This document shows, piece by piece, positions 15,462 through 60,946 of a stretch of DNA of 64,000 nucleotides. The notes beneath the pieces were generated by a model. It saw only the letters and a list, made by a program, of their open reading frames with translations, was not told the DNA's origin and ran no database searches. Made by a program: the position numbers and the translations under genes. This DNA is from Euprymna scolopes (taxonomy: Eukaryota): NCBI GenBank assembly GCA_053919585.1, contig CM132784.1; one strand, given 5' to 3'. Positions within the stretch are counted from its first letter, which is position 1. Each line of letters opens with the position of its first letter.

Positions 15462-15620
15462 CTTGGTAGGTTCAGCTCTTTGTGTGAGGATGGTGTATGG
15501 GGGGTAAGAAAGGGTTGTGCAGAGTCCTTTATGGCTGTTGCATCAGTGTGCTCTGTGGAAGTGAGGCGAAATACACTAGCATCATTATTTGTCAGCTTAC
15601 TCTGTGATAGATCTCGATGG
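15462..15620 (+). CDS. PPP4R1: PPP4R1 exon: LGRFSSLCEDGVWGVRKGCAESFMAV...LLCDRSRW
   Basis: tttcag/gtaagt; 159 nt; HEAT repeat motif VWGVRK.CAE.FMAV. Confidence 0.95.
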
Positions 15621-15625
15621 GTAAG

Positions 15626-15657
<32 letters not shown>

Positions 15658-16132
15658 AGCCTTTTGAGTATTACCTGAAAATGTGTAACTTGATCTGGAA
15701 TTGAAGATTTCAAATTGAGTACTCATTTAAAATCTTGCTCTTAATTTTTGCTAAAATGTGGATATGACTGTTTGTTGGTTTTTAATTAAAATTGGAAATA
15801 ATTCCTAATTGGTAAACTAACAAAAATTTAAAGTTTTGTGTCTGAGAACTTGCTAACAAAGGAGTGAAATGTTTCTTCTAACACATTTTGAAGCAATTCT
15901 GGTTAAGATAAATATAATCCTTTTCTGGACTAATTTTAATAAACTAAAATGAAGTCTGGATTCTCAATAATAGAATTGCATCTGACATGTTTTAATTTGG
16001 CATTTGGCAATATAATTTATCCTCTTTGGAATATTTGCAATATTTCCAATAATGATACTAGTACACTACTTTGATAGAAACTATTACAGAAACAAACTAT
16101 TAACTTTTAAATGATTGATTTTTTTTTATCAG

Positions 16133-16257
16133 GTGAGAATGTCCGCCTTCCAGCAGCTAGGCCCCTTTATTTCTACTTTTTCTTCGCCAAACAATGAGTC
16201 AGGATTGTATATAAGTGAAGATGGTGTTCTGCACGTCTCCAAAGATCTTGCTGAAAG
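16133..16257 (+). CDS. PPP4R1: PPP4R1 exon: VRMSAFQQLGPFISTFSSPNNESGLYISEDGVLHVSKDLAE(R)
   Basis: atcag/gtaaga; LGPFISTF motif; ends phase 2. Confidence 0.94.
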
Positions 16258-17344
16258 GTAAGATTAAGATTTCAAAATTTTATTCAGCAGGTCAATAGAT
16301 ATTTTAAAATTGCATAAAATTTTATCCATATGCACAGGGTTTGGTTTTGAACCTGCATAGGTCGTGATTGTTTTCATTCTAATTCAGTGATTAACATTGC
16401 AACCAGTGTCTGAATGTATCATTACTGTTACAAACAAAATCACAACTCTAGTTTAAAACTAATATTTTATTTTCAGAAGATACAATGATACTTGTTTTCT
16501 CATTGATGATGGTTTTGTAAATCAACACTTGAATACAAACACAAGCCCCAACTGATTACTCTATTGCCTTGTTGAAATAGGATATTAACTTCATTTATGG
16601 TAGACCAAAAGTAAGCTTACGTAAAAATTGTTGGCAGTAAGAGACTCCTTAGTTTAAAAATTATGGTTTACTCTAGCTAAAATCTAGCTCGCCTATATAG
16701 CATGAATTTTTGTAGTCAAGATTGTTGAGCCAGACAATTTTTTTCTCTTTATTCTCTTTAATAAAATATTTCTCCCACTGTAGGCCTGCCATGAGTAGCA
16801 TTGTGCATGACGTAATCTCATATTTAAGGACTTGTTTATACATAGTCATCTCTTATCTCTTCTATACTTGGGTATAAAAGGCACTTTGTGAGTTTGGTAT
16901 GGACTGTGCATAAAATCAACTTATGGTTCTTTGACATGATAGGGACATGGTAGAAATGAATCTTTTAGAATTGAATCATGATACTTGATTTTAAACTTTA
17001 ATTCAAGCAATTATATAAATTTCTATCAAAACAGTAGCTGCTATATACATGTCAATGTGTTTGTATGTCTCGCAAAAACTTTCCACACAGGCCACGGATT
17101 TCGCTTGATAGCTATCATTTTGAAGCTCGAACCTTCAGCCAACAAATATAATTTAAAAAAAAAAAAAAAATGGCTAAAAACATTGATTCCTTCACCCTCA
17201 ACTAGACTATTTTTTTTTTTTTTTTTTTTTACAGGGAGAGTAGCAAAAAATTGTTCCTTCATGACAACTATATATGCATGCGTCAATGGTGGTGTCCATT
17301 GAATTAGTTTAAATATAAAAACCGACTCAATTTCAGCAACCCTT

Positions 17345-17400
17345 TCTTAGCTCAGTTGGTTAAAAAGCAGCATCATTATCTAGATTGAGTTTGAATCGGG
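17345..17400 (+). mobile_element. Degenerate tRNA-derived (SINE-like) head
   Basis: A-box-like TAGCTCAGTTGG and B-box-like GAGTTTGAATC; no intact cloverleaf. Confidence 0.35.
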
Positions 17401-17565
17401 ATATAAGATATCTTTTCATTATGGAAACGGTTCATTCTTTTTCCATCATGTATGCTGTTTCCCCCCCCCCTCAGATTTTCTAAAGTTTTTTTATTGAAAC
17501 AACCCATTTTGTTATTTAAACCCCACCACCACCATGCGTACCTTCAAACCCCCGAGCACCAATGC

Positions 17566-21108: not shown

Positions 21109-22097
21109 GAATCTAACAGATGCTGAAAAAGAAGCCAAATTGTCTAATGATAGAGCTGCCAACAACACTAAACAGACACCGACGGAGCCTCCGACGGTAC
21201 CATCACCATCGTCTGCAAATTGTTTGCAAGAAAACAGCAAGACCTGTGAATCGACAACCAGCTGCCAGACTGAGGCTGACATTCTTTCATCCACCTCTTC
21301 TTCGTCCTGTGATATGACAACCGTAGAACCAAACTGTGATATAACTCTTCAGTCCATCAGTATAGAAGATGACCCCTCTACAACAAACTCTGGGGCTGTC
21401 ACAGAAGTAATGACTTATAACCAAGAAATTTCACTTGAAGAAAACCGGTTATCTGTCCACTTGGAGCCTTTACCGGCAAATACTGTCAATAGTGACCATA
21501 GTAATGTTTCTAATGATAATGCTGATAATAAAACGCCTGACGTTATCTCGGCGTGTTCAGCAGAAAGCTCTCTCCTCCAACAAAGCAATGATCCTATCCA
21601 GGAACAGGTAATAGCACAGCCCGACATCGCTGCTACTGATGCCAAGGTCCAATCCACAGACGAAACAACATCCAAGTCTCCAGATTCCTTCAATACATTT
21701 CAATTTTGGAGAACCCCACTTCCCGATCTCAATATCGAGCAGGATCTTTTGTCAAAACAATCGTCGGATGCAAGTACGTCGTTAGGTAGCACTTCTGAAG
21801 GTTCCGGCCTCATCTACTCCCTGTTTTCGTCAATTGACCATCCTGAACTTGGCAGTGGCACTCATTGTGTCTCTGAACAAATTCTGAACCATTTAGCTGA
21901 TATGGAGCTTGGGAATATGTCTTCAGACTCGTCATCATGCGTTCAAAGTGAACTTAGTGCTGCAAGAATGTTGCACACAGCCAGCATAAGCACTGTGTAT
22001 AATCCGAGCGAAACTGTATCTGACATTGGTAGCACCCATGTCTTTGGCCATCATATGAATGATTCAAACAAGATCATTGTTGGTGGCTTAAGTGATT
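21109..22097 (+). CDS. PPP4R1: PPP4R1 large exon encoding the S/T/D/E-rich linker with conserved FNTFQFWRTPLPDL
   Basis: ttgcag/gtaagt; 989 nt open frame (ORF 21140-22231); phase 2 to 1; FWRTPLP motif recalled from PPP4R1. Confidence 0.93.
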
Positions 22098-24827: not shown

Positions 24828-24889
<62 letters not shown>

Positions 24890-26328: not shown

Positions 26329-26420
26329 ATATGAGTGACAGTTTACATCAAAGCTATGACAACAGTAGTTATAATACTGATGATCCTTTCAATAGAATAA
26401 CTGAACTCTGTGCCCAACAG
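26329..26420 (+). CDS. PPP4R1: PPP4R1 exon: (Y)MSDSLHQSYDNSSYNTDDPFNRITELCAQQ
   Basis: Long polypyrimidine tract plus cag and gtttgt donor; phase 1 to 0 exactly bridges the neighbouring exons. Confidence 0.82.
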
Positions 26421-27090: not shown

Positions 27091-27376
27091 AACTAGGATA
27101 AAATAAACAGAATATCTCCTTGTTGGTCCTCCGATTTTATCACAGAGACCTGTTTTCAGTGGCTTCCGTACGTCCATTAGTCTGGACTATTGCCATATAT
27201 CCGTCCATTAGTTTTCCTGAAATTTTGCCACAAATTCTATTTTATAAAATAGATGTGTATAGTACAAAAAATTCTGTTGACCCCCCCCCCCCTCCTCCTC
27301 TAAATTCCCCAAATGACTAAAAATGACACCTTTTGTCCCATAACTTTTGATCGGTCCATTAGAAGTTTTCTTTGAA

Positions 27377-27414
<38 letters not shown>

Positions 27415-28846: not shown

Positions 28847-29032
28847 GAAATAGTGCCTCCTAGATTGCTTGAAAATTTTCTTACCATGGTCGATCCTGCA
28901 TTATCCCAGTCTGTGGATTCAGATATAACTCGTCATTGTGCCTACAATTTCCCTGCGGTAGCCTATACCCTCGGGCGGCATAATTGGCATTGCCTCAAAT
29001 CGCTGTTTGAAACTCTGGCTGCTGATATGCAA
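28847..29032 (+). CDS. PPP4R1: PPP4R1 exon: EIVPPRLLENFLTMVDP...HCAYNFPAVAYTLGRHNWHCLKSLFETLAADMQ
   Basis: ctcag/gtgagt; 186 nt; HCAY..PAVA.TLGR.NW motif. Confidence 0.96.
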
Positions 29033-30036: not shown

Positions 30037-30198
30037 TGGAAAGTTCGTCGAACCCTGGCATTCTCCATCCATGAACTTGCTGTTATTCTTGGCGAGGACA
30101 TCACTCACAAAGACCTTGTTCCAGTTTTTGACGGATTCCTCAAAGACCTTGACGAAGTTCGAATAGGTGTTTTAAAACATTTTATGGAATTCCTAAAG
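30037..30198 (+). CDS. PPP4R1: PPP4R1 exon: WKVRRTLAFSIHELAVILGEDITHKDLVPVFDGFLKDLDEVRIGVLKHFMEFLK
   Basis: ttttag/gtaagt; 162 nt; very close to the recalled PPP4R1 sequence. Confidence 0.97.
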
Positions 30199-33689: not shown

Positions 33690-33692
33690 CAG

Positions 33693-33793
33693 CTGTTAAA
33701 GCCTTCTGTGAGGAATGAATACTTGCCAAAAGTTCAGAACTTTCTTACAACAGACAACCATAGAAACTGGCGTTTCCGCTTGGAGTTGGCAGA
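33693..33793 (+). CDS. PPP4R1: PPP4R1 exon: LLKPSVRNEYLPKVQNFLTTDNHRNWRFRLELA(E)
   Basis: Poly(T)-cag/gtaagt; TDN.RNWRFR.ELAE motif; ends phase 2. Confidence 0.96.
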
Positions 33794-41775: not shown

Positions 41776-41776
<1 letters not shown>

Positions 41777-41933
41777 TTATTTTGTGTCTCACCAAAACCC
41801 ATATTATGAAAAACTTGTCGAAACTATGCTTAAACTGCAAGTTGATAAAGATAAAGACGTCCGTTACTTCTCTGCGATGGCACCAAACAAATTCCAAACA
41901 GACTGTCAAGATGAAAATGACTGCCAGGATACG
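41776..41933 (+). CDS. PPP4R1: PPP4R1 penultimate exon: (D)YFVSHQNPYYEKLVETMLKLQVDKDKDVRYFSAM...CQDT
   Basis: Poly(T)-aaag/gtaagt; LQ.D.D.DV.YF terminal HEAT motif; phase 1 to 0. Confidence 0.93.
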
Positions 41934-42699: not shown

Positions 42700-43787
42700 T
42701 AGACTTCATTGGTAGGGCATGCCGACTGCCCCCCTGCAGAGAGAAGTCCCTCAATGGGACTACCTGTTGGGCATAGGTAGTAACCCCTAATGTCTTAGGA
42801 CAGAATGCTGGTGGTTGAGCCGTCCATGACTTGGGGGGGAATTATGGCCCTGCAACATACCACTTCGACCTTTACCTTGACTAGAGGGAGGTTGGAGAGG
42901 CCCGATCTGATCAATCGACTAGTCATGCCAAGCCCTAACCCTTACACTGGCAAATGTTGATTACAACATCCAAAAAAAAAAAAAAAATCTAATATCTTAC
43001 TCTCACTACAAATACAGGCAAACCAAGTAAATGTTAGAAGGGCGGTGACAAAGGTCAGGCAATTGCTGAGATAAAACCACGACTGCTCCCTACCCAATGT
43101 TTCTATTAAACTTGGAAAATGAAACTAAAGGAAGAATCGGGAAACGATGGCACAAACTCAACCGGTTATCTTTTTTGTATCCTTAGGATGAAAGGGCGAA
43201 TAGGCCCCCAACATCTTCCACATTTGGGCTCCAAGGAGAGTGGGGAGCAAGAGATGAAAAACTAATCACTTATACATGGATCTAATAATTAAAAACCCCA
43301 GAAAAACCAAAAGAATTTGCTGACATTTCAGATGTCACCAGCTCAAACAGCAAGAATTCAATCTTGAACATATTGAAACCTTGGAACGAAAAAAGATCAG
43401 TGATCTGTCTCCATTCCTAATTGAAAAGGTATTAACTCAAAACATCAATCCTAAAACAGTTAAAAAAATGAAAAATGACAACCTACTTGTTACAATTAGA
43501 AAGATGCAAAAAACCTTAGGAATAGAAAAATTCTATATTTATAAATGCAGAACTTTTTCCCACGACAGGTTAAACATTTCAAAAGGCGTCGTAAGCCATG
43601 AACTTTCTTTGACTATGACAGAAATCAAAAATGCTCTAAGAAAACAAGGAGTAATTGATCATGTCCGAATCAACATAAAAAGGAATGTCAATCCATACCT
43701 ACAATGTATATACTAGCATTTAATACTCCTAAAATTCCAGAAGTCCTGGTGCAACCAGATCAGGCTGTCGGAAAATGACTCCTGACA
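42700..43787 (+). mobile_element. I/Nimb-like LINE 5' fragment: 5'UTR plus N-terminal ORF1 (gag-like)
   Basis: ORF 43381-43716 LSPFLIEK...TVKKMKNDNLLV...NISKGVV followed by YILAFNTPKIP, typical of ORF1 in this group. Confidence 0.75.
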
Positions 43788-44049
43788 CAAATGCACCTAC
43801 ATTAACACATTTGTTTTTTTCCTTGCTTTTTGTACAACTAAAGCATGTTCTGCAAAGCCCAAAACAAAAACAGCCCCCCCACCCCTCCCATTTTTTTTTT
43901 TTTTTTTTGTCATTCCACTCCTACTTCCCTACTTGTTTCATAACTTAAAAAATACCAACCAAAATAATAAAAACAACCAAGCTAAAATCCATGAATAAAT
44001 ATTTATAGAAAAAAACAACTGGAGATATAGTTTTTCCAATCAGATTCTA

Positions 44050-45880: not shown

Positions 45881-46851
45881 AATATACCTCCTGAAATGGA
45901 GAAACTATCTATCAAAAATAAATACAAATGTAAAAAGGTCTGGGACATGATCCAAAAATTTCAGGGAAAAGTAACAGCAACCTGACCTATAATAAACAAA
46001 AAAAATACTAGCAAGAAAGAAATGGTAAATTGTCTTGCTGAAACTTTTGCAAAAAACCTCCTCCAAAAATTCCAAATTAAGGAAAAAGTAGAAAAGGAAA
46101 AACTCTAGTTTCAGACAAATAATACAGAAAAATACAACCAGCCATTCTCTAAAAATGAATTGAAAGTATCCCTAAGCAAAGCTCATGACTCTGCTGTGGT
46201 CCTGATCAAATCCACTATCAATTTATAAAATTTCCTGATACATCTACAGATTACCTACTACAAATATTTAATATTTGGGAAAGTGGCAATGTTCTTGAAA
46301 TATGGAGGCAGGCCATAGTAATCCCTATACCTAAATCATCAAAGAACTCTCCAAATCCCATGAATTACTGACCTATAGCACTCGCTAGCTGTATTTCTAA
46401 AATTATGGAAAGAATGATTAACAGCAGATTAGTATGGTACCTTGAGACAAATAATCTGATTACAGATTATCAGTCAGGATTTAGGAACAAAAGAAGCCCT
46501 GTGGACCATCTTATTGGGCTAGAAACCTTCATCAGTGAAGCCTTTATCAATAAAGAACATTTAACAGCAGTCTTTTTCGATATTGAAAAAGCATACGACT
46601 CCGCATGGAGGCATGGCATAAAAGATTTACAAGAGCTAGGATTAAAAGGCAGAATGCCCATTTTCATCACACAATTTTATGATGTACAATTAAGTGATAC
46701 CCTATCCATCAGTAAAAAAAAAAACGGTGGTGGGGTACCACAAGGAAGCATCCTGTCTGTTAAATTTTTTAGCATTAAAATAAATAGCATCGTTAAAAAT
46801 ATAAATGCAGGAACAGAATGTGCCCTCTGGATGATTTGCTGATCTGCTATA

Positions 46852-47577
46852 GGGTTATTCCAGCCCAATTCATCCAGCCCCGACACACCCCCTCTTGGAT
46901 TTTTTTCATATTTACACCATACAAACTTTGGGTTAAAACTAAGAGAAATCTGCAATTTCAGCCCAGTTGGATTTCAGGAACATATTTTTTTTCAGTTGGT
47001 TTCGGCCTGGAAATCAAAAATTGCTATCTCATGACGTAGAATTTTCGACCCCCGGCGTTTTACAAAATTTGCATTTTTGTTGCAAAAAATAAAGCTCTGG
47101 AGCTAAATATTCACACATATAAGGTTTTGAGGGCAAGGAATCCAAAAATCATGGTTAGAAAGATGGCAAATGAGAGGAAGTACCTTATTTTTACCATTTT
47201 AGGTGGTGCCGCAGCACTTTTTTAGAGCTTGTTTGGGGCGATATTTTATTGAGAAAAAAACATAACTGTGGTGCTTTGCCAGACTTCTCCTTTGGATTTT
47301 TAAAGTGACAATGGGTTGGAAATTACAAAAATCAAATAAAACCTTTCGGCATATTTGACATTTCCAGACACTAAAGCCTCAAAATTGGCATTTTTATAAA
47401 AATTTAAGGATTTTTTGGTGAATTTGGCAACAATCTAATCTTAAGTTATGATCAATATCTAGAGCTGAAAAAAGACTTGGATCGACCCATTATAGCCCAT
47501 TTTCATAATATAATGTCAAATTACATCATATAAAAGGATATGGACCCCTACTTCACAGTCAAAATGGACAAAAAATA
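46852..47577 (+). repeat. Left TIR (~726 bp)
   Basis: Reverse complement of 53754-54482 with only a few differences seen by eye. Confidence 0.95.
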
Positions 47578-50500
47578 CCCATACCCTCAGATTTGGCTGT
47601 AATTTGCTGTGCAGATAGACAATATAGAAACTAAGAAATCCTGAAAATTTGAGCATCTAATTCCAAGCGGTTTCCGATTTAGAGCATTTTTTGTTTTCGT
47701 TTTTGCTGCATAATGTGGCGCCCGGGATAAATTTTGTGATGTCATTTCTTTGAATATTTTCTGATTGAAAGATCCTATGGCTCTGAAAATTTGCACAGGT
47801 AAGTATTTTGACCCAAGGAATCCAAAAATGGCATCAGATTTGCTAAAAAGTGAATCCTTATAGAGATATTAAGGGTTTTTGGATTTTTTACCCACATGCC
47901 CCAAAATCCAATAAAAAAGGGTGTGGCTGATATGGTAATGCATTTTTTTTTTCATATATTTTTTCTAGACACAAATTACCGCTGGACCAAAAATGTTAAA
48001 AAGTTCTTGTTCCGTTCACTCACAGTTTCTGTTGAAAGTCAGGTCTATTTTCGATGATAGTGAAAAATATTCCCTTCCCTATTAGATGTAATAATTAATT
48101 TAGACATTTGCTAAACTGACATCATACCTTAATTTTGGAATAAATTTGCAAGTAAGCCAGATACTAAAAAGTTCTGATAACAATTTCAACAATTTCACAG
48201 GCCTACAGTCTTCAAAATTAATTGATAAGGGTTGAAAACACCAAGTTATGATAAAAGTATGCTATTTTTTTAATAAGAAACTAGTAATAGGATGGTAAAA
48301 ATCTTAAACTTTTAGTACTATCTCAATCCAACAATTTTTATTAGAAAACTTCTTCAGAAACATTTTAACCCTCAAAATACCACAGTATTTTGATCCAACT
48401 TTTAAAACTTTCGTCTATATCTTTCTGAAAATGCGATTTTTTGCTCAGATCTTCCAGCTTCCTGAATATTTTTAACCTATCATATAGTGTCAAAAAATCA
48501 TAAATTTACAAAATAATTTTTTTCAGGGATGTCCTTGAGAGTAACCCCTATAAAATTCTTAAGAAATTCCAAAATAATAAAAGTGACCTGATCTAAATGA
48601 AATGATCTAAATTATTAGCCTAATTTCCAATTTCAAAAACGATTCTGAAAAAAAAATGTTAAACTTTTCCATAGCTGGTACTAAAAGATAAAATGAGGAA
48701 TATTTATTTTTAAGCTACCAGTACAAATAAAACCTAATAACAGATATATGATGTGGATTTATTTTAGCTGTGTAGGAAAAAACAACAACCATAAAACATG
48801 ACCTTTTGATTTCTATCCAGTCCTTCAGCATTGACAAATCTAACAAGAAGGTGCTAAAAGGTCTTAACTTTGGTTTTTAAGCTGCTGGCTATTTATTGGT
48901 TGAGGCTGCTCCCTGTTTACTGGTTTGTAAAACCAAATTCTCAATATATAACAGGGGGATGGGTGAAGATAAAAAGCAATAAAAATTAATTTTACTGAAA
49001 CCGTTTTGCCAGTTGAGTTTGTCTTGGAACTGACAAGACCCACAAATACAGACTAGAAGATTGAAATTTCGTCAGTCACCATAAAAATGTAAGTTATATT
49101 TTAATCTAAATGTAGAATTTAAGTAGATATTTTTTACTATATAAAACTACTATTTATATTATTATTATTATTATTATTAATAATTTATTTTAAAATAAGT
49201 TTTCAGTAAAATTCTCTCTCATAAACAAGAGTGGTATTCTAACATTTTATTTTAAAAGATTACACATGAACACACTGAAAAAACTTGACAAAGAAATATA
49301 TCAATTCTTTTAGAATTTATTCACATGTAAATTTAATTTAAAATAAGCCCTGTATTTCTTAGTTATTTAAGTATTTTCGGATAGTTAATAAAATAAATTT
49401 GGTATGTATGCAGAATATAAGCCGTGCTGAAATAATGTTATTTAGAAATTCATTTTTTTTTTTTAAATGAGGAGGAGATGACATTTTATAACTTTTCTTC
49501 TTCCACCTAACAATTAAATAAACAAAAATGTTGTAAATTAAACTTGATCTTATCAAAAAATATCATGTTCCGCATTCTGCATGAGCACCAATAAATTTGT
49601 TATCGGAAATAAATTCTGGGCATTTTTGAGAATTATTCATTTATTTTGCAAGATGTGGCTTAAAGATTCCACTGGAATAAAAATCAAGCTACATTGCATC
49701 CATTCATCTGCTACTATAGAAATATAAGTGACCGTGAGCATATTAATTTGTAATAATATCTGGAAAAAAAATTGTTAATTGCTTTAAAAGTAAGAATGGT
49801 CATGGTATGGGAAATCAATTTTATGTTAAATTTAAATGCAAAACTCATCTCTCAATCTGCATGCTAAAATAATTATTGTTTTGGTTATGAAGGTCAGGTT
49901 ATTATAATTTTTTATAAGTTTCCCATTAGTTTTTGATTTTGATGGTGATTAAAGCCTAAAGTTATTCTCCAAAACACATGTATTTTTACAAAAAAAAAAG
50001 TTATAATGAAAATGTTTACGAAAATTCTAAAACTTTGAAATTTAGCTATATTTTTGATTTTTCATATCTTTCTTCATAACTTTTTTTTCATGTGTGAAAA
50101 TACATTTTTTTTTCTTTTGAAGATTATTTTAGACTTTAATCTTTCGAACACAATCAAAAACTACTCGGAGGCTTATAAAAGAAATTATGATAAGCCGGCT
50201 GTCATAACTGCACCCCATCAGTTTTTAGCGGCTAGGACGCATTTTGTCAACTTTGCCGTTTGTTTTGTCTTTCCGCGAAAGATAAGCGAACACAATAAAA
50301 ATGCCAGAATTATATTCACTAAATTAACTATTAAAAACCCTGTTACATCCACATCGCATATACTTTTTATCTTTTGTTAATTTTATTAAATTTCATTATT
50401 CGTATTACCATCAGGACTTAAGGTTAGGAGGAAAGGGACGTGGTTTTACTGATTTTATGAAGTTTTATCAGTAACATTAACATGGCCAAGATTAAACAAA

Positions 50501-51005
50501 CTTGGTAAGATGTTCTTTTTCACATCTTTTGCCTTGTCATAGAGGACAAAAGCATAAAATAAATAAATTATAAAAAAGGCACGTTTTATATTCTACGTTT
50601 GATTTAATTGACAATAAAGTTGATATTATTTTTCTTGAAAACCATTTTTTTTATAAACTTGTAAATAAACTGCATTTTCTAAAGGTTAAGAACGAATTTT
50701 CATGAAGTTTCAATTTCTGTTTTGTTTATTTTATGCAAGTAAATTAAATTTACACCTTATTTTGATGTTATTATGATCTAAAGTTTATTTTTACTAATAG
50801 TTTAAAAACAATAAATATTTATCAGTACCAGCAGTGGAAAATTAAGTTTAAAATGATATTAAAAGAATTGTTTTTGGAATCAGAAATTAGGTTAAAATTT
50901 TTCTGATTCCAATATCTCAAAAAGTTCTGATTCAGTTGAGTATTGCATATTCTGCTCATTGTGAATTATTATTTCACATCTTTCTTCCAGAGCAATAAAT
51001 TAAGA

Positions 51006-53665
51006 ATGTCTTCTGAACCAAGGAAACGAGAGGGAGGAGATACATCATTGATGACAAGTGCTCCTCAATGTTCTTTTGGATTACTAATGAAGAGTGCATG
51101 TCACCGCAATCTGAAGCCATCTTCAACACCAATAACTGCATTAGAGCATGATGTAAGAACTGTGCTCAAATTAAGAGCTGGTGTCACACTCACTGATGAA
51201 ACCGTTGCTAACATTTGCAGGTATCACGAATTTCATTTGGGGCATTACTTTGAGAAAAAATATACAAAGTGCTGCAACATCTTTTTGAAGCACAAAAGAA
51301 AGGTAAAGGGTGATCGTGCTATCAAGTTAGACATGGCTGAGATGCTAAAGCAGAAGGGCTACCATGTTGTTCCTGGCTGGAAGCTTTGCCGTCACTGTGA
51401 AGTAGCTGCCAAGAAGTTAGAAGATACAAGTGAAACAGAAGGAAGTGACAACCAAGACCTTGAAAATGAGTCGCAAATTGAACAAAAGAGAGAGAAACTG
51501 AATGACAGTCTAATGATGTTTGATATATCCCCTATAAAAACCGGTAGAATGCAGAAGCACACAAAAATCAATATTGTCAGAGAGAAATTAGAAAGAAACT
51601 ATGAAATGCAAGTAGAGGCAGCTGCCAAAGTCCTTAACATCTCTAGCCCTGAATTAGGAAGCCCTATTAGCAGCCAAACGAGTCAAACGGATTTAGTGGC
51701 AAAGGCAAAAGATTATGATTGTTTGTTGGATGCAATGAAGGACAAACTTGAGAATAAAGAAATGAAAACCAGTGAGAGGATCCAGTTGATGACTTTAGCT
51801 CCGGAAAGTTGGTCTCGAAAAGAGGTGTCTGAATATTTCAATGTCTCTGAATATATAGTACGTGAAGCACGGCAACTGAAAAAGGATCGAGGTATTCTTT
51901 CATTGCCACAGAAAAAGAAGGGGAGAGGTCTCTCAAAAGAGGTTATCAATTCTGTCTTGGCTTTCTATGAGGACAATGAATTTTCACGGTTAATGCCTGG
52001 AGGGAAAGATTTTGTGAGCATTGGTAATAAAGTTCATGTCCAGAAACGGCTCCTATTATGCAATCTTAAGGAGCTTTATGTAGCTTACAAAGAAAGCTAT
52101 CCTGAACACAAAATAGGTCTTTCAAAGTTCTGTGAGCTCCGTCCAAAATGGTGCGTCACCGTCTTGACATCAGGTTCTCATTCAGTTTGTGTTTGCACCC
52201 ACCATCAAAATACCAAATTGCTTGTTGACTGCTTTGTTTCAACTGTCAAGACTCAGCTCAGAAGGAAAGCTGAAGAATCCAGAGATGAGAGTGCTGCTAA
52301 TGTACCAACTGAAAATCCCAATTTTAATATCACTTACAAAGATTTGATGGCCTTGGTAGTTTGCGACACCAATAGTCTTGAATGTATGGTCCACCGTTGT
52401 CCTAAATGCCCAGGTTTCCCTGCTCTAGAGAAGTATATCAGAGATAAATTTACTGAATTGGAAATTGACAGTGAGATGTCATATAGTCAGTGGGAGAGTG
52501 TGGATAGGACAATGCTACGGACACAGATGGCTGATGTAGATTACTTCATAGAGATATTGGTATACAATGTTGATAATCTAACGACCCATTCCTTCACAGC
52601 AAAGAGCCAAGCGCAGTATCTAGAGAAGAGAAGAAATAACTGAGACCGAATGTATACTTCTCTTGGACTTTGCGGAAAATTATCACTACGTGGTGCAAGA
52701 TGAGATCCAGGGATATCACTGGAACAAAGACCAGTGTACCATACATCCAGTGGTAATTTATTACAAAGATAACAATGGTAAACTTCAACAGATCTCATTA
52801 TGCATCATTTCAGATGACCTTGAGCATGACACCTGTTTTGTGCATGAACTGCAAAGAATGGTGATGTACATCAAAGAGAAATTTCCCTGGATCAAGAGTG
52901 TAGAGTACTTCAGCGATGGCTGTGCTGCCCAATATAAAAACTTCAAAGCATTTATTAACCTTTGCCATCACTCATCAGATTTTGGAATTGATGCAACTTG
53001 GGCATTTTTTGCAACTAGCCATGGCAAATCACCCTGTGATGGAATTGGTGGGGCTGTCAAACGCAAAGTTCTCCGTGCCAGCTTGCAAAGGCCAATAAAA
53101 GACCAAATACTCACTTTTCATGCTGTTGCAGACTTTTGCAGATCATCGATCACTGGTATCATGTTTCTAAAGATCGACAAAGACATGGTTTCAGTTCGAG
53201 AGAAACTTCAAATGAGATATAAACTGGGAGATACTGTGCCTGGTACAAGGAGCTGTCACTATTTCAAACCAACTTCTCAGTTTACTATTCAGGGCAAGCA
53301 ACTGAGTGCTGACACAACGATCTTTATCGACCATTCTTTCCTGGACATGCCTACGCCGCTAGATGAAACTCTGGAGTTGCTCAAATGCAATGACTACATT
53401 ACTTGCATTTTTGATGGGTATTGGTGGTTAGCATTGATTGAGTGTCAACAGGGAAGAGAAAGATCTTACTTGCAAATTCCTGCATCCACATGGACCATCA
53501 CATCAATTCCACTGGCCAACTAATAGGGATAGAGGCTATATTCCACTAAGCAAGGTCGTTATGAGAGTGCAGACCCCAAGTATTTCAGTGAATGGTAGAA
53601 CATATTTCATCACCAAGGAGGAGAAAAATAAGACTCAGAACTATTTTGACAGATTAAGTCAATAG
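51006..53665 (+). pseudogene. Sola2-like transposase (~880 aa if repaired) with two frameshifts at ~52632 and ~53443
   Basis: ORFs 50943-52643, 52663-53523 and 53438-53665 join as ...YLEKR/EITETECILLLDFAENY... and ...WWLALIE/SVNREEKDLTCKFLHPHGPS; Cys/His-rich N-terminus; acceptor ttccag at 50990 upstream of ATG 51006. Confidence 0.85.
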
Positions 53666-53753
53666 TTGGAGTTATAACAAATGTCTGTTTTATATTTGTT
53701 TGACAGTTTTTCTTATGATAAACTAGATTATGCATCAGTCTTTTATTTTCGAC

Positions 53754-54482
53754 TATTTTTTTGTCCATTTTGACTGTGAAGTAGGGGTCCATATCCTTTT
53801 ATATGATGTAATTTGACATTATATTATGAAAATGGGCTATAATGAGCCGATCCAAGTCTTTTTTCAGCTCTAGATATTGATCATAACTTAAGATTAGATT
53901 GTTGCCAAATTCACCAAAAAATCCTTAAATTTTTATAAAAATGCCAATTTTGAGGCTTTAGTGTCTGGAAATGTCAAATATGCCGAAAGGTTTTATTTGA
54001 TTTTTGTAATTTCCAACCCATTGTCACTTTAAAAATCCAAAGGAGAAGTCTGGCAAAGCACCACAGTTATGTTTTTTTCTCAATAAAATATCGCCCCAAA
54101 CAAGCTCTAAAAAAGTGCTGCGGCACCACCTAAAATGGTAAAAATAAGGTACTTCCTCTCATTTGCCATCTTTCTAACCATGATTTTTGGATTCCTTGCC
54201 CTCAAAACCTTATATGTGTGAATATTTAGCTCCAGAGCTTTATTTTTTGCAACAAAAATGCAAATTTTGTAAAACGCCGGGAGTCGAAAATTCTACGTCA
54301 TGAGATAGCAATTTTTGATTTCCAGGCCGAAACCAACTGTGAAAAAAAATATGTTCCTGAAATCCAACTGGGCTGAAATTGCAGATTTCTCTTAGTTTTA
54401 ACCCAAAGTTTGTATGGTGTAAATATGAAAAAAATCCAAGAGGGGGTGTGTCGGGGCTGGATGAATTGGGCTGGAATAACCC
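53754..54482 (-). repeat. Right TIR (~729 bp)
   Basis: Reverse complement of the left TIR. Confidence 0.95.
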
Positions 54483-55507
54483 TATAGATCAAAATATATT
54501 ACAAGAATAGAATGCCATTTGCAACTGTCTCAACAAAAATGGAAAAGAAAAAATGGGTTTTAATTTTCAAAAGAAAAAAAACAAGCCATCCATTTCTGCC
54601 AAATCCAGAAAATGCACCATGACCCAATATTGAAACTGGACAATGAAATTGTACCTTTAATTGATCAATATAAATATTTGGGCGTCATATATATATAAAG
54701 CCATCCAACTCTTAAAGGTAGGAGCTCACAGACTAGGGTGGGGACAAAGACTACAATTAAATTATACAGATCCCTACCTCCCCAGTGGTAAGTCTATATT
54801 TAGAAACAGATGAACCCTCATTGTCACTTAGAAGAGAAAAACTAGGACTACAATATTATACAAAATTGGCTTCATGTCCAACTAATCCTGCCTGTAAATG
54901 TCTTCCACCCTCAATACAAAAACCTCTTTGAAAGAAAAGAAAAATGCTATAAAACCATTCAGCCTACGTATGGAAGAATCCATAAAGGCCGAATACATTG
55001 CAACAACATGAATCTGTAAAACCTAAATATCCCCACTGGCTGACAAAACAACCAAAAATAATATCAGACTTAATTATCCTAAAACCAATCCAATCATACA
55101 AGAAAAATTCCAAATAAAGATAAGTATTCCAAACACTCAACAATTTATACAGACAGTTCAAAAAGACAGATGTGCAGCCATACACAATAGAACAAACCAA
55201 ATCAAGATTACCAGACAAAGCCTCCATTTACAGTTCCGAAGTATCAGCCATTGGTATGGCAATTGATCTTATAGACTCCTCTAAAGATAAAGAATTTACT
55301 GCTCGGATCCAAATCAGTACTTGAAACACTGGAAAACAGGAAGCCAACAAACCAATAATCACCAAAACCCTAAATAGAATTGATATTCCTAACGATAAAA
55401 GCATCTTTGTTGTTGATCTAGTCATATTAAGAGAGTAATGAGAGCTGACAAAGCAGTAAAAGGAAGCATTAAAATTGACCCCAACCAAAGAAGATCCCTC
55501 ATACTGA

Positions 55508-58500
55508 CACAAATGCTTGAAGTCTACATTATATGCAAGTATATCATTCCTGTAACCCTGTTGTAGCCAGAGCGAATGTACCAACTATAAAGAAAATCAG
55601 ACTGAAATTTGGAAAAAAAAAAAAAAAAAAAAAAATTACCAAAACTAAATATACGCTAAACGTCACCTACCCAGCAGCAAGGAAAAAAGTTGAAACAATC
55701 AAATATTCAGAAATAATAAAAAAGAATACTCCTAATACTAATAAGCACAACAATTATCACGCAACAAACTTAGACATTAAAATCCAAGACCTCACCGACC
55801 AAATCAAAATATTAATAAACACAATTGAAGAAATGAAAAAAAAATAAATATAAACAAAACCTCACTGGAACCAAAAACCCAAACATCACACCCAATAGAA
55901 ACAACCCCTTTAGCTGAAAAAGAAAACAAAAAAAAAAAAGCAAACACCAAAAAACATACCAGAGGCAAAAAGAAAATAGCAGAAAAAAAAAATTCAACGG
56001 ACAAGTCACGTTCACTCTGCCCCGGAAAGAAGGGGCCGGCGGAACAGCGAAACAACCTCTGCGGTGCATGAACCTAAACTCCCAACACACTGCAACCACG
56101 ACCATGCTCACAATCCAAAAGTAGAGAAACAAAAAAAACACTATGCCTTTAGGACTCGAAAACCAAGAAGTTATGGAGACTGAGGAATCAAGATATCCCT
56201 CTTATCCCATGAACCAATAAATGACGATAAGGAAAAAAATAAAAATAAATAAAAACAATACCCATGCAAAATCTTACAAATCGTAACGAAACAACATTCC
56301 TACAATGGAACTGCAGAGGACTAAAACCATGAAGAAATACTAGAAATCACCAACAAACATAATCCAGCAGCAATAATATGTCTACAAGAAATACTACTCA
56401 AAGAAAATCACAAGTAAAAATTCAAAGAATATAACATGTACGACAAAACCCATATATCTACAACAAAGCAATCGGAGGAATGTCCATACTAATTAAAAAC
56501 ACTATACATCACACAATCCTCCAATTAAACACTGAACTACAAGCAATAGCACTAATGGCTAACTTACACCGCAAAATCACAATCTGCTCCATATACATTC
56601 CACCAAATCGGCCAATAAAAAAAAAAAAAAAGAAATAGACATGCTAATTAACCAACTTCCACCCCCATTTATAATAATGGGAGATTTTAATGCGCACAGC
56701 AACCATTGGGGAAGTAATCAAAACAACAACAAAGGCAATATAATAAATGAAATCCTAAATACAACAAACCTATGTATACTAAACAATGGTAAAAATACCT
56801 ACATGCACCCAGCCAATGGATCCATGTCTGCAATAGACTTAACAATATGCACTCCATTCATTTATATGGACTTCCATTGGGATGTACTAGAAGATCAACA
56901 TGGAAGTGATCACTATCCCATCATAATTAAAAGTAATCAAAAAATACCGGAAGAAAAAGTCCCAAAATGGAAATTACATAAAGCCAACTGGGAAACATTT
57001 ACCAATCTATGCAGAACAGAATTAGACACGAACATTCTAAATAAAGAACCACTAAAACATTTCACACAATTCTTAAACAATATTGCCACCAAAACAATAC
57101 AAAACTTCAAACCCCACAAAAAAATCCAACCCTTGGTTTAATGAAACCTGCAAAAAAGCTGTCAAAGAAAAAACAAAAACAAAAAAAAAAACCCTTCAAA
57201 AATTCAAACAAAACGCTACAACAATTAACTTAGAAAAATAGATGCGTGCCAAAGCACGATACACCATAAAACAAAGCAAAAAAAACATCCTGGAAAAACT
57301 ATTTCACAGCTAAACAACCAAACACCAACTAAAAAAACATGGAATATAATAAAGAAAATAGCTGGAAAAGAAACACAAAATACCGCAAACTATTTAATTA
57401 AAACTGATGGAACAAAATGCATAAACAAAAAAGAAATAACTAATTTACTAGCTGAAGAATTCTACAAAAATTCATCAAACAAACAATATTGAACATCATT
57501 CCAAAATAGCAGAAAGAAAAACTTAATTTTACAACTAATAACAAAGAAACGTACAACATATCATTCAACATAAAAGAACTAAAAAGAGCAATAAATAAAA
57601 GCAGAAATACAACTCCAGGTCCAGACGATATACATTATCAATTCCTAAAACAACTACCAGGACCATCTTTGAAACTGTTGCTGTACATATATAACAAAAT
57701 ATGGAACACAGGAGAAATACCAAAATCTTGGTTTGAATCAACCATCATACCAAAGGCCAAAATGCAAGTAACCCAACCAGTTACAGACCCATAGCTCTAA
57801 CCAGCTGCCTCTCCAAAACTATGAAAAGGATGATAAACAACCGCTTAATATGGTACCTGGAAAAAAACCTTATCAAAATATCAGTGGATATAGAAAAAAA
57901 CAAAGCACAAACGACCAAATAGTATGACTAGAATCATTTATTAGACTGTTTCGTACGCGGGCACCACGTGATGGCAGTCTTTTTTGACCTGCAAAAGGCC
58001 TACAGTGCAACCTGGCGATATGGAATTCTAAGAGACGTACACAATATGAGAATAAGAGGAAATATGGCAATATTTATACAAAACTTCCCGTCTCAAAGAT
58101 ACTACAAAGTATGACAAGGAAACTATCAGATCAATACGATCAAGAAGCAGTAGTGCCACAAGGTAGTATATTATCCACCACCTTATTCTTAATTAAAATG
58201 AAATCACACAAATTGTCGACAATTTGAAAGATCATTATTTGTAGATAACTTTTCAATTGCATATTCTGCATTAAATATAACAATTGAAAGAAAGATGCAG
58301 CAATGCTTAAACAAAATAGAAAACTTGATCGATAAAAATGGATTTGAGTTGGCACAAAACAAAACTGTCTGTATTCATTTCTGCAGAAAACAAATATCTG
58401 GACCCACAGCTACAAATATAAGGAATCCCAATAGCACAACACACGAAATTTCTAGGTATTACACTGGACAATAAACTTAATATCCATATCAGTAACTTAA

Positions 58501-59923
58501 AGCAAAAATGCCAAAAAAGCAATGAAAATTTTAAAAGTAATATCAAAAACAGGCTGGGTAGCAGACCAAGACACAATGTTAAAAATATACCAGGCACACA
58601 TAAGATCAAAATTAGATTATGGCTGCATCACATATAGCTCCACCCGTAGATAAATCCTATCTCCAAAAATCATTAACCCTACAAAATCAAGGATTAAGAC
58701 TTAGTCTGGGAGCATCTCAAACATCACCCATGGAAAGCCTATACATAGAAGCCGATGAATCCCCCTCTACATTTAAGATGGCAGTAATTAATAACACAAT
58801 ACGCAATAAAACTACAAAGTGATCCAAACAACCCAATACATAAAAAAGCCCTTCAACCTACAATATACAGACTTTCATATCAGCAAATCAAAAAACATAC
58901 CTTCTTTTGGATATCGCATCAAAGAAATATTAGCTCAAATTAACGAAAACCGTAAGTAACACACAGGAAACAACCATGGACTTTAAAAGACCCAAGCACT
59001 GATCTGACTCTTACTAAATACCAAAAAAACAATACCAGCAACTTAATAAAAAGCTGCTTGGGTGAACTCAGAAAAGTACAACACAAATATACACTGATTC
59101 TTAAGCCCTTGGATATAAATTTAAACTATAATAGAATCAAGTGTTAGCCCCAGGAAGGAGCCCCTTGATCTCTTCAAACTAACAAAAGTAAAATTTAAAA
59201 AAAAAAAAAAAAAATGGAGCCAAAACAGGAACAGGTGCGGCATGTACAGATGGAAAGAACCCTCTCCAAATAAGACTTCCCATCAACGCATCAATATACA
59301 CAGCAGAACTACAAGCAATCAAAATGGCACTTGAATTAAGAACAACAATAAGAAAAAATTCATTATATACCGATTCTTTGTCATGCATCGTAGCTCTATA
59401 GAAGAAATAGAGCATCCTTATATATTAGATATAATGAACAAATACAATGAAATTATTGAAAAAGGTAAAGAAATAATCTTTGCTTGGATACCAAGTCATG
59501 TTGGTATTCCAGGTAATGGAGAAGTTGACAAATTAGCCAAAGAAGCCATTAGCAAAAATATAACAAACATCAAAATACCATACACAGATTTCAGCAGAAA
59601 AATAAGGGAATATAACAAAAATAAATGGCAAACAGAATGGGACACATATACTCAAAACAAATTACGCGAACACCAACCCATAATAAAAGACAAAACAACA
59701 ATAAAAGGACGAAGAGAAAATATCGTTCTAATCAGAATCGGACATACCAAATTAACGCTCACCTAATCGAAGCAACAGAAAAACCAAAATGCAATTTCTG
59801 CGACAGATGACAATAAAACATTAACAGAATGTCAAAAATACAAAACTACCAAAAATAAATATTATACAGTAAACGAAATTAAAGAATTGTTTCACAAGGT
59901 GACACCACACCAAATCATCAAAT

Positions 59924-59962
<39 letters not shown>

Positions 59963-60121
59963 CTCTTCAAATCACTTTAAACTGTAAAAACTCAAAAATT
60001 TTAAAAATACATAACTTAAAAAAAAAAAAAAAAAAAAAAAAAAACCTCTACTAAATACATAGCTTGGCATTAAATGACCCACAGTGGTTGATATGCCGTG
60101 AAGCCCCAATAAACCAACCAA
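55508..60121 (+). mobile_element. LINE B (I/Nimb-like), 5'-truncated within ORF1, with decayed APE-RT-RNase H ORF2
   Basis: 12-bp TSD CCCTCATACTGA at 55496-55507 and 60122-60133; LQWNCRGL, MGDFNAH, GSDHYPI, VPQGSILS, WIPSHVGIPGN; 3' AATAAA plus (CCAA)n tail. Confidence 0.9.
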
Positions 60122-60846
60122 CCCTCATACTGATTTAAAACAAACCATTGACAAATATATTAGAAACGTATGGCAAGAGTCGTGGAGTTCCTGTACTAAA
60201 AATAAACTACCAAATCAAGGAAACCATAGGAAAACATAAACCAAACAAATGAATGACCAGAAAGGAGGAAGTTATAATAAGACTCCGAATAGGAACCATA
60301 GACAGTCAATCATATACTAACAAGATGCGAAGACTTGAAAACAAAACGACTGAATCTATATCATGAAAAAAAACTGACAGACATATTCACTCATGTAGAC
60401 CCAACTACCCTTTTCAAGTATCTGAAGATAACGGGATTACTCAACAAAATTTAAAAAAAAAAAAAAATTACCTTATCTAACTATATAAACAGACACTGAA
60501 CGCCAGATAAATCCATATAACTATTAATGTATATGAAAAACAAACTCTGACATTAAATGACCACAGGTTGATATGCCGTAAAATCAATCGATCAATTCAT
60601 CAATATTTTTATATAACTACTAGCAGGCCACCCAGTCGTAAGGTATGCTTTAAATTTTTTTAATTACAAATTGTGTATTAAAGCCAATTCTATCAATTTT
60701 ACCTAATATATAGATATCAAACGTGAAAAAACAATGATTTGGGATTCCATTAGCTAGAATCAAACTAACACGGGTAATCAAGTGTTGTTTGGGGTAGTAA
60801 CATTACCTTATTTTCCATATTTTTAAACCAGCTTTTCTATTTTTAG

Positions 60847-60858
60847 GTACCCGTATGA
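60847..60858 (+). CDS. PPP4R1: Probable PPP4R1 terminal coding exon: VPV-stop
   Basis: Polypyrimidine tract plus ttttag acceptor, phase 0, GTA CCC GTA TGA; first strong acceptor after the TE stack, followed by UTR-like unique sequence. Confidence 0.65.
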   Translation, partial: VPV

Positions 60859-60938
60859 GAAAGTATCTGATACTTCATCCAGCAGGGACCAGCTCCACGT
60901 GTGGACAAATTCACCTTTCCGAGTGGATAGACTTCCAT

Positions 60939-60946
60939 CTGTGATA
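60939..60946 (+). promoter_or_regulatory. K-box / miR-2 8mer site (CTGTGATA) in the putative PPP4R1 3'UTR
   Basis: Perfect complement to miR-2 nt 1-8, about 80 nt after the predicted stop. Confidence 0.55.

What the first reader, a model, noticed from the sequence alone, without database searches (positions are those of the whole stretch)
15602..60946. Host mRNA carries four perfect miR-2 8mer sites: candidate self-limiting PPP4R1/miR-2 feedback loop
Seen: CTGTGATA, the perfect match to the miR-2 seed (K-box), occurs in predicted exonic sequence at 15602-15609, 21307-21314, 21334-21341 and 60939-60946 (3'UTR). The two sites in the large exon start only 27 nt apart, within the spacing reported for cooperative repression. 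Weaker sites lie at 61976-61982 and 63073-63079 if the UTR extends that far. My rough base-composition estimate is about 0.1 expected 8mers in ~4 kb of mRNA. Caveat: the CDS sites all encode x-Cys-Asp-x, so codon content inflates that expectation. Inference: the eight intronic miR-2 copies may repress their own host transcript. I do not know of this being described.
Basis: partly seen in the sequence, partly recalled or inferred. Interest (0 to 1): 0.75.

Follow-up and report, generated by a model that had tools for sequence, protein, structure and literature searches.

The report
Conserved miR-2 sites in host PPP4R1
A squid-like cephalopod gene (PPP4R1) that carries eight miR-2 microRNA genes in one intron also carries four perfect miR-2 target sites in its own mRNA, and three of these have been kept unchanged since squids and octopuses split, so the gene very probably limits its own output through its intronic microRNAs.

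Summary
CTGTGATA lies on the + strand at 15602, 21307, 21334 and 60939. An own-species mRNA contig and polyA RNA contigs place all four in mature PPP4R1 mRNA. This includes the 41933|60847 splice, which puts 60939 81 nt into the 3'UTR.

Codon bias does not explain the sites: permuting synonymous codons expects 0.33 CDS 8mers, with P(>=3) = 8e-4.

The decisive evidence is conservation.
- All four sites are identical in cuttlefish mRNAs (83% CDS identity).
- The tandem CDS pair and the 3'UTR site are identical in Argonauta, where 4-fold sites are only 39% identical.
- Of 173 8-mer windows conserved in all three lineages, CTGTGATA is the only 8-mer seen more than once (3 times).

Haliotis, three unknown invertebrate genomic contigs and copepod-like mRNAs also carry sense seed matches. 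Protostome PPP4R1 proteins show a ten-fold excess of Cys-Asp-(A-start codon), which is absent in deuterostomes.

Best reading: selected miR-2 sites that form an intronic-miRNA-to-host negative loop. It is old in coleoids and possibly pan-protostome. Repression itself and co-transcription are not shown.

The scan's earlier notes cover only the cluster, not this loop. I found no paper describing it. The two weak sites have no support.

The parts
4148..7328 (+). mir-71 hairpin (4148-4217) plus eight mir-2 hairpins. The miR-2 3p arms start at 4462, 4654, 5256, 5584, 6053, 6250, 7198 and 7302, and all begin TATCACAG.
   Evidence: Rfam: mir-71 at 64 bits and six mir-2 above the gathering score; eight mature-like 23-mers such as TATCACAGCCAGCTTTGATGAGC.
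4039..13126 (+). Host intron that holds the microRNA cluster, between exons 3949-4038 and 13127-13231.
   Evidence: Own-species mRNA contig L005 aligned to the window. Argonauta, Haliotis and the unknown contigs L041, L045 and L048 hold the cluster in the same intron.
15462..15620 (+). HEAT-repeat exon with site 1. The 8mer CTGTGATA is at 15602-15609, read as CTC TGT GAT AGA (Leu-Cys-Asp-Arg).
   Evidence: Identical in cuttlefish. Argonauta has CTT TGT GAT CAT (6mer only) and Haliotis has CTC TGT GAC CAG. Cys-Asp here is a protein-level feature of lophotrochozoans.
21109..22097 (+). Large exon encoding a poorly conserved, probably disordered, Ser-rich region. It holds the tandem sites 2 and 3.
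   Evidence: Only 35% amino-acid identity to Argonauta across this exon.
21307..21314 (+). Site 2, 8mer, read as TCC TGT GAT ATG.
   Evidence: TCCTGTGATA is identical in the window species, cuttlefish and Argonauta. The residue after Asp changes (Met to Asn) but keeps first base A.
21334..21341 (+). Site 3, 8mer, read as AAC TGT GAT ATA. It starts 27 nt after site 2 (27 nt in cuttlefish, 24 nt in Argonauta).
   Evidence: AACTGTGATA is identical in the three lineages. The next residue is Ile, Lys or Asn, all from A-start codons.
21146..21152 (+). Decayed third CDS site. It reads AATGATA here, TGTGATA in cuttlefish and Argonauta, and CTGTGATA in Haliotis.
41776..41933 (+). Penultimate coding exon with a GTAAGT donor at 41934. 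It splices across an 18.9-kb TE-rich intron to 60847.
60847..62491 (+). Terminal exon: Val-Pro-Val, stop at 60856-60858, then the 3'UTR. RNA contigs reach 61981 in three runs (AATAAA at 61959) and run more thinly to 62491 (ATTAAA at 62472).
   Evidence: The 3' end is inferred from contig ends and poly(A) signals, not mapped.
60934..60946 (+). Conserved 3'UTR island TCCATCTGTGATA, which contains site 4 (8mer at 60939-60946, 81 nt after the stop).
   Evidence: Identical at +87 in five cuttlefish mRNA contigs and at +84 in Argonauta. It is one of only three conserved islands in the first 730 nt of the 3'UTR.
61976..61982 (+). Weak 7mer-m8 site (CTGTGAT) at or across a possible proximal poly(A) site.
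   Evidence: Not present in the 732-nt cuttlefish 3'UTR.
63073..63079 (+). Weak 7mer-A1 site (TGTGATA), probably outside the transcript.
   Evidence: coverage gap at 62547-62680, and a different contig beyond it.

Best explanation
[quoted passage not shown] One intron carries a same-strand cluster of mir-71 plus eight mir-2 hairpins.

The spliced mRNA carries four canonical 8mer sites for the miR-2 seed: one in a HEAT exon, a tandem pair 27 nt apart in the poorly conserved, probably disordered, central exon, and one 81 nt into the 3'UTR. These are selected microRNA response elements.

Each transcription of the locus can give up to eight miR-2 molecules and one mRNA. Argonaute loaded with miR-2 would bind that mRNA and lower its stability or translation. 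PPP4R1 output would then rise less than linearly with transcription. This is an intronic-miRNA-to-host negative loop, also described as an incoherent feed-forward circuit.

Shown here: the sites exist, they are exonic and on the sense strand, and they are conserved. The tandem pair and the 3'UTR site are under nucleotide-level constraint across coleoid cephalopods.

Inferred: repression itself, cooperation between the tandem sites, and production of the miRNAs from the host transcript.
For: - Sites and seeds.
- Exonic status and the 3'UTR: own mRNA contig and the splice 41933|60847 in polyA RNA contigs of three runs.
- Codon-controlled enrichment: 0.33 expected, P(>=3) = 16/20000.
- Cuttlefish conservation: all four 8mers are at orthologous places in cuttlefish mRNAs, with CDS nucleotide identity 0.83 and 4-fold-site identity 0.61.
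- Argonauta: eight mir-2 in the same intron, 8mers at the orthologous pair and at 3'UTR +84, although 4-fold identity to the window is only 0.39.
- In the big exon, only 1.6% of 8-nt windows are identical in the three lineages. They form three blocks, and two of those are the sites. An alignment-free check agrees.
- In the 3'UTR, the site is one of three conserved islands.
- Unbiased test: among 173 conserved 8-mer windows, CTGTGATA is the only 8-mer that recurs, three times.
- The residue after Asp varies (Met/Asn; Ile/Lys/Asn) while the first base A is kept. This points to RNA-level rather than protein-level constraint.
- Wider support: Haliotis has six mir-2 in the same intron, one CDS 8mer and two CTGTGAT within 160 nt of the stop. 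The unknown genomic contigs L048, L041 and L045 each have intronic miR-2 and a sense 8mer. Copepod-like mRNAs have a conserved tandem pair of 7mers.
- Protein footprint: in 37 protostomes, Cys-Asp-[IMTNKSR] occurs 62 times against 6.0 expected. In 13 deuterostomes it occurs once against 1.3 expected.
Against: - There is no direct evidence of Argonaute binding or repression.
- CDS sites are generally weaker than 3'UTR sites (general knowledge).
- The synonymous-position test alone is modest for sites 2 and 3 (P = 0.004-0.03), because TGT and GAT are the common codons in this AT-rich genome.
- Site 1 sits on a Cys-Asp that is conserved as protein across lophotrochozoans. It is an 8mer only in decapodiforms, so its conservation says little.
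- Co-transcription is not shown. In C. elegans the intronic mir-2 and mir-71 have their own promoters and partly different expression from ppfr-1 (PMC2835999).
- Other miR-2-family loci elsewhere in the genome could supply the miRNA.
- The species in the protein survey are phylogenetically related. Their codons were checked only in cephalopods, Haliotis and the metagenome contigs.
Confidence: 0.65

Rival explanations
1. The sites are real, selected miR-2 (K-box) target sites, but this is not a self-loop. The cluster has its own promoter(s), or other miR-2-family loci supply the miRNA. PPP4R1 would then be an ordinary target that is silenced in cells with high miR-2, giving mutual exclusion or tissue sharpening.
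For: The conservation evidence is the same as for the main reading. In C. elegans, mir-2 and mir-71 in ppfr-1 introns drive reporters from their own upstream sequences. There mir-2 is mainly neuronal, while ppfr-1 is expressed in intestine, muscle and some neurons (PMC2835999).
Against: The same-strand intronic position has been kept from cephalopods to Haliotis and the unknown contigs. In oyster the six intronic mir-2 genes track the host gene, r = 0.93 (PMC4138081). Even with an extra promoter, every host transcript still contains the hairpins.
Confidence: 0.22
2. The conserved blocks serve something other than miR-2 and match the seed by coincidence. Candidates are a short Cys-Asp peptide motif in the probably disordered region, a splicing enhancer, an RNA-editing structure, or a binding site for an RNA-binding protein.
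For: Cys-Asp at site 1 is a protein-level feature in lophotrochozoans. The synonymous-only test is modest. The 3'UTR has two other conserved islands of unknown function.
Against: The identical 8-mer recurs in the CDS and the 3'UTR and is the only recurring conserved 8-mer. The residue after Asp changes while its first base A stays. In copepod-like and other contigs the seed match sits in another reading frame, as x-Val-Ile. The Cys-Asp-(A-start) excess is present in protostomes, which have miR-2, and absent in deuterostomes, which lack it (the taxon distribution of miR-2 is from general knowledge).
Confidence: 0.08
3. Chance plus codon usage: four 8mers arose without selection.
For: Cys-Asp dipeptides with common codons raise the CDS expectation to 0.33. 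Seven distinct 8-mers, CTGTGATA among them, occur 4 times or more in this mRNA.
Against: P = 8e-4 after codon control. The sites are conserved across lineages whose 4-fold sites are near saturation. Sites recur independently in other phyla.
Confidence: 0.02
4. The mRNA acts on the miRNA rather than the reverse, as a sponge or a trigger of target-directed miRNA degradation.
For: There are several sites on one abundant transcript.
Against: There is no extended 3' complementarity. The best duplexes are seed-dominated, at -12 to -18 kcal/mol.
Confidence: 0.03

Closest known systems
Self-regulation of a host gene by its intronic microRNA (modelled in PMC3534558 and PMC7554026; surveyed in PMC6049507)
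   Same: A same-strand intronic miRNA with seed sites in the host mRNA. The circuit has the topology of a negative loop or incoherent feed-forward motif.
   Different: Here there are eight copies of the miRNA and four 8mer sites. Three of the sites are in the coding sequence, including a tandem pair. Conservation spans the octopod-decapodiform split and probably goes further. No functional test has been done yet.
The ancient linkage of mir-71 and mir-2 with PPP4R1 (oyster PPP4R1, C. elegans ppfr-1; PMC4138081, PMC2835999)
   Same: Same miRNA families and same host gene. Here the same intron also holds the cluster in two cephalopods, Haliotis and three unknown contigs.
   Different: Those papers report location and co-expression only. 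Neither reports miR-2 sites in the host mRNA.
The K box (cUGUGAUa) and miR-2-family targeting in Drosophila 3'UTRs (general knowledge: Lai and colleagues; Stark and colleagues)
   Same: The motif is identical and the miRNA seed family is the same.
   Different: The classic K boxes lie in the 3'UTRs of Notch-target and pro-apoptotic genes, not in the coding sequence of the miRNA's own host.
Conserved miRNA sites inside coding sequences (general knowledge: Forman 2008; Schnall-Levin 2010/2011)
   Same: Seed matches in ORFs under nucleotide-level constraint, with repeated sites adding up.
   Different: Here the constraint appears to leave a recognisable peptide footprint, Cys-Asp followed by an A-start codon, across phyla.

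Membership tests
Canonical animal miRNA 8mer target site | Watson-Crick match to miRNA nucleotides 2-8, plus A opposite nucleotide 1 | tested here: met
   CTGTGATA is the reverse complement of the first eight bases, TATCACAG, of all eight miR-2 3p arms.
Canonical animal miRNA 8mer target site | Lies in the mature mRNA, on the sense strand | tested here: met
   Own-species mRNA contig L005 and polyA RNA contigs, including the splice junction.
Canonical animal miRNA 8mer target site | Conserved more than the surrounding sequence | tested here: met
   Met for sites 2, 3 and 4. Not clearly met for site 1, which is conserved only in decapodiforms on a conserved Cys-Asp.
Canonical animal miRNA 8mer target site | Argonaute binding and repression of the mRNA | not testable with these tools
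   Needs CLIP or CLASH, reporters, or miRNA inhibition.
Intronic-miRNA-to-host negative feedback circuit | miRNA gene within an intron of the target gene, on the same strand | tested here: met
   The cluster at 4148-7328 (+) lies inside the intron 4039-13126 of the + strand gene.
Intronic-miRNA-to-host negative feedback circuit | miRNA is made from the host primary transcript | not testable with these tools
The literature is mixed: oyster co-expression r = 0.93 (PMC4138081), but own promoters in C. elegans (PMC2835999).
Intronic-miRNA-to-host negative feedback circuit | Host mRNA is functionally repressed by that miRNA | not testable with these tools
   Only conservation speaks for it.
mir-2 precursor family (Rfam RF00047) | Hairpin scoring above the family gathering score, with the mature 3p arm UAUCACAG... 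| tested here: met
   Six hairpins score 47-59 bits against the 45.5-bit threshold. Two more, with 3p arms at 4462 and 4654, have canonical mature sequences but fall below the threshold. TATCACAG at 27138 forms no hairpin.
PPP4R1 orthologue | Full-length similarity to named PPP4R1 proteins, with a HEAT-repeat architecture | tested here: met
   The exons align along Argonauta, Octopus and Acanthosepion PPP4R1. Pfam HEAT families are on record for the relatives.
Trigger of target-directed miRNA degradation | Seed match plus extensive pairing to the miRNA 3' end | tested here: not met
   Duplex predictions show seed-dominated pairing only.

The most novel reading that the evidence does not exclude
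The miR-2-to-PPP4R1 loop is not a cephalopod peculiarity. It would be an ancient, pan-protostome autoregulatory circuit whose coding-sequence sites have shaped the protein itself, leaving Cys-Asp-(Thr/Asn/Ser/Lys/Ile) tripeptides scattered through the probably disordered region. The need to keep miRNA and target in one transcription unit could then explain why mir-71 and mir-2 have stayed inside PPP4R1 from nematodes to molluscs.

Support: Haliotis; three unknown invertebrate genomic contigs with intronic miR-2 plus a sense 8mer; conserved tandem 7mers in copepod-like mRNAs; and a ten-fold excess of Cys-Asp-(A-start) in 37 protostomes but not in 13 deuterostomes.

Not yet checked: codons in most species, C. 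elegans ppfr-1, and lineages such as Drosophila where mir-2 has left this host.
Probability: 0.5. Interest if true: 0.85.

Novelty: new member of a known kind. Interest (0 to 1): 0.74.

Why it matters
Self-targeting by intronic microRNAs is mostly a prediction from mammalian target lists, and deep evolutionary support for any single case is rare.

Here one host-miRNA pair shows site conservation across roughly a quarter of a billion years or more of cephalopod evolution (the divergence time is from general knowledge). There are also signs of the same relationship in gastropods, crustaceans and other protostomes.

If it holds, it gives three things:
- a concrete functional reason for one of the oldest miRNA-host gene linkages known;
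- a clean example of microRNA target sites constraining a protein sequence;
- a simple, testable handle on the dosage control of protein phosphatase 4.

Tried and rejected
1. Chance or codon-bias explanation. Rejected by the synonymous-codon permutation and by conservation.

2. Protein-motif explanation for the tandem pair. Disfavoured, because the residue after Asp changes while the first base A stays. The same 8-mer is conserved in the 3'UTR, and other taxa carry the seed match in the Val-Ile reading frame.

3. A ninth mir-2 at 27138. There is no hairpin.

4. Target-directed degradation or sponge reading. There is no 3' pairing.

5. miR-71 sites in the host 3'UTR. There are none inside the transcript; the only GTCTTTC is at 62738.

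6. The weak sites at 61976 and 63073. They are not conserved in the cuttlefish 3'UTR, and 63073 is probably outside the transcript.

7. DNA for Octopus vulgaris, Magallana, Pecten and Lingula orthologues. These species were therefore compared as proteins only.

8. Literature. Five searches that named miR-2 or mir-71 together with PPP4R1, ppfr-1, a phosphatase or host gene, and the papers read from them, gave only the location reports and no paper on targeting. Subscription journals are not covered.

9. Synonymous-position-only test. It is only modestly significant, so I do not lean on it.


Full report
**1. The observation**

CTGTGATA occurs on the + strand at 15602, 21307, 21334 and 60939, exactly as reported. 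A fifth + copy at 6029 lies inside a mir-2 hairpin. Eight of the nine minus-strand copies are the seeds of eight miR-2 3p arms. These read TATCACAGCCAGCTTTGATGAGC and close variants. They sit next to a mir-71 hairpin, all on the + strand between 4148 and 7328. The ninth minus-strand copy, at 27138, forms no hairpin. The whole window holds 14 copies against 1.94 expected from dinucleotide shuffles.

**2. The gene and the transcript**

The exons belong to PPP4R1. A 62-residue exon found full-length PPP4R1 proteins. The closest, from Argonauta hians, aligns along the window exon by exon. A word search with that protein returned named cephalopod and other PPP4R1 proteins, plus P0160, a 990-residue product identical to the window's exons.

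The mRNA contig behind P0160 (L005) aligns to the window as follows:
- exons about 3272-3333 and 3949-4038;
- the cluster intron;
- exons 13127-13231, 14961-15026, 15462-15620, 16133-16257, 21109-22097, 26329-26420, 28847-29032, 30037-30198, 33693-33793, 35213-35333, 36749-36861, 41191-41351, 41776-41933;
- the terminal exon starting at 60847.

About the first 140 codons lie upstream of the window.

The long last intron is real. PolyA RNA contigs from three of four runs have, just before 60846, the loose end CTGTCAAGATGAAAATGACTGCCAGGATAC, which is window 41905-41932. The reading frame then gives Val-Pro-Val-stop at 60856-60858, so the fourth site is 81 nt into the 3'UTR. RNA contigs continue to 61981 in three runs, where AATAAA sits at 61959. 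They run more thinly to 62491, where ATTAAA sits at 62472. A gap follows at 62547-62680. The 3' end is therefore inferred, not mapped.

**3. Is it more than chance?**

The four non-hairpin + copies all fall in about 4.3 kb of exon out of 64 kb (0.068^4 = 2e-5). With the protein fixed and synonymous codons permuted within the gene, the CDS expectation is 0.33 rather than about 0.05. Three or more sites still occurred in only 16 of 20000 permutations. The protein has exactly three Cys-Asp dipeptides, and all three are coded xxC TGT GAT Axx.

**4. Conservation in cephalopods**

Two further decapodiform lineages were recovered as mRNA contigs. One is Acanthosepion pharaonis or a very close relative, and the other is 98% identical to it. 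They share 83% CDS identity and 61% identity at 4-fold sites with the window species. All four 8mers are present at the orthologous places, including the 3'UTR site at +87.

The genomic locus of the octopod Argonauta hians has eight mir-2 copies in the same intron. It has 8mers at the orthologous tandem pair, 24 nt apart, and at 3'UTR +84. 4-fold sites between Argonauta and the window are only 39% identical, and the big exon is only 35% identical as protein.

In that exon, 1.6% of 8-nt windows are identical in the three lineages. They form just three blocks: GATGCTGAAAAAGAAGC, TCCTGTGATA and AACTGTGATA. An alignment-free comparison gives the same colinear blocks. The residue after Asp differs between lineages (Met/Asn; Ile/Lys/Asn), yet its codon always starts with A.

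In the first 730 nt of the 3'UTR there are only three conserved islands: CCAGCAGGGACCA, TCCATCTGTGATA and TTTTAATTTATTCAT.

The least biased statement is this. Of 173 8-mer windows identical at orthologous positions in all three lineages, 170 8-mers occur once and CTGTGATA occurs three times.

Two cautions apply. A test on synonymous positions alone is modest (P = 0.004-0.03). Site 1 is an 8mer only in decapodiforms and sits on a Cys-Asp that is conserved as protein in lophotrochozoans.

**5. Beyond cephalopods**

- Haliotis asinina has six mir-2 copies in the same intron, one 8mer in the big exon, and two CTGTGAT within 160 nt after the stop. The exon 8mer is at a place where cuttlefish and Argonauta have TGTGATA and the window has lost it.
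- A metagenome scan returned many PPP4R1 mRNAs whose closest named relative is the copepod Tigriopus. One group of three lineages (69-83% nucleotide identity) has CTGTGAT in the Cys-Asp frame, followed 24-45 nt later by TGTGATA in a His/Asp-Val-Ile frame. These are two of the seven conserved blocks of 7 nt or more in the probably disordered region.
- Three unknown compact genomic contigs carry canonical miR-2 arms in the same intron and one sense 8mer each. L048 has it in the 3'UTR 29 nt after an Ile-Pro-Val stop. L041 has it in the acidic coding region. L045 has it in the first exon after the cluster.
- At protein level, I examined the region between the FISTF and FWRxPLP motifs of 37 protostome PPP4R1 proteins. 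There, 65 of 152 cysteines are followed by Asp (shuffle mean 14.8, maximum 28 in 5000). Cys-Asp followed by a residue whose codon can start with A occurs 62 times against 6.0 expected (maximum 16). Thirteen deuterostomes show 3 against 3.5 and 1 against 1.3.

This is what selection for UGU-GAU-A in frame would produce. However, the codons were verified only where I had DNA, and the species are not independent.

**6. Mechanism**

The sites are seed-type with little 3' pairing. They therefore look like ordinary repressive sites and not degradation triggers.

The most likely working is as follows. Transcription of PPP4R1 yields the pre-mRNA. The intron yields up to eight miR-2 molecules and one miR-71. 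miR-2-loaded Argonaute then binds the four sites, and the tandem pair lies within the spacing reported for cooperative action (general knowledge). The effect would be to dampen PPP4R1 output and buffer its noise, as modelled for such circuits (PMC3534558, PMC7554026). The same wiring would also let a cell make much miR-2 without over-producing PPP4R1.

Shown: anatomy, exonic status and conservation. Inferred: binding, repression, cooperativity and co-transcription.

The main rival keeps the sites functional but denies the self-loop, because C. elegans mir-2 and mir-71 have their own promoters inside ppfr-1 (PMC2835999). In oyster, on the other hand, the cluster tracks its host (PMC4138081).

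**7. What is known**

The location of mir-2 (and of mir-71 in C. elegans) in PPP4R1/ppfr-1 introns is published (PMC4138081, PMC2835999, PMC3410857). The general idea of intronic miRNAs targeting their hosts is also well known. Five searches that named miR-2 or mir-71 together with PPP4R1, ppfr-1, a phosphatase or host gene, and the papers read from them, gave no report that miR-2 targets PPP4R1. The library lacks most subscription journals.

I therefore file this as a new member of a known kind. It has unusual features: coding-sequence sites, a conserved tandem pair, and a possible peptide footprint across phyla.

**8. Verdict**

Confidence is about 0.85 that at least sites 2, 3 and 4 are selected miR-2 sites. 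It is about 0.65 for the full self-limiting loop, and about 0.5 that the relationship is pan-protostome.

Noticed in passing
window 60879-60891 and 61071-61085: Two further 3'UTR islands are identical in the window species, cuttlefish and Argonauta: CCAGCAGGGACCA, and TTTTAATTTATTCAT. The second resembles a cytoplasmic polyadenylation element or an AU-rich element. Their function is unknown.
   Followed up: partly
window 41934-60846 and 60847-60858: The last coding exon holds only Val-Pro-Val-stop. It lies behind an 18.9-kb intron filled with LINE and DNA-transposon sequence. A C-terminus of Val, Ile or Leu followed by Pro-Val is kept in cephalopods, Haliotis, an unknown lophotrochozoan contig (L048) and copepod-like mRNAs.
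   Followed up: partly
window 60481-60875: An unspliced RNA contig crosses the last acceptor site in all four polyA runs. This could be intron retention, pre-mRNA, or transcription of the adjacent LINE.
   Followed up: no
window 62985-64000 and 62095-62224: A separate RNA contig covers 62985-64000 and runs off the window. Past the window's end it continues into a near-copy of 62095-62224, with 3 mismatches and 10 gapped letters. This may be a repeat and possibly another transcript.
   Followed up: no
window 21146-21152; L012:15716; L004:34665: A third, older CDS site is an 8mer in Haliotis and TGTGATA in cuttlefish and Argonauta, but has decayed to AATGATA in the window species. This shows site turnover.
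   Followed up: yes
L014:565, L022:836, L026:472, L036:88: A second group of copepod-like PPP4R1 mRNAs codes the conserved Cys-Pro-Val-Ile motif of an N-terminal HEAT repeat as TGT CCT GTG ATA, which gives a sense 8mer. Relatives have CCT GTG ATC or ATT. I could not tell whether this reflects selection or codon usage.
   Followed up: partly
window 27138-27145: There is an isolated TATCACAG on the + strand in an intron. No hairpin forms around it, so it is taken as a chance match.
   Followed up: yes
L004:40119: Argonauta has an extra CTGTGAT in a HEAT exon that is absent from the window species.
   Followed up: no
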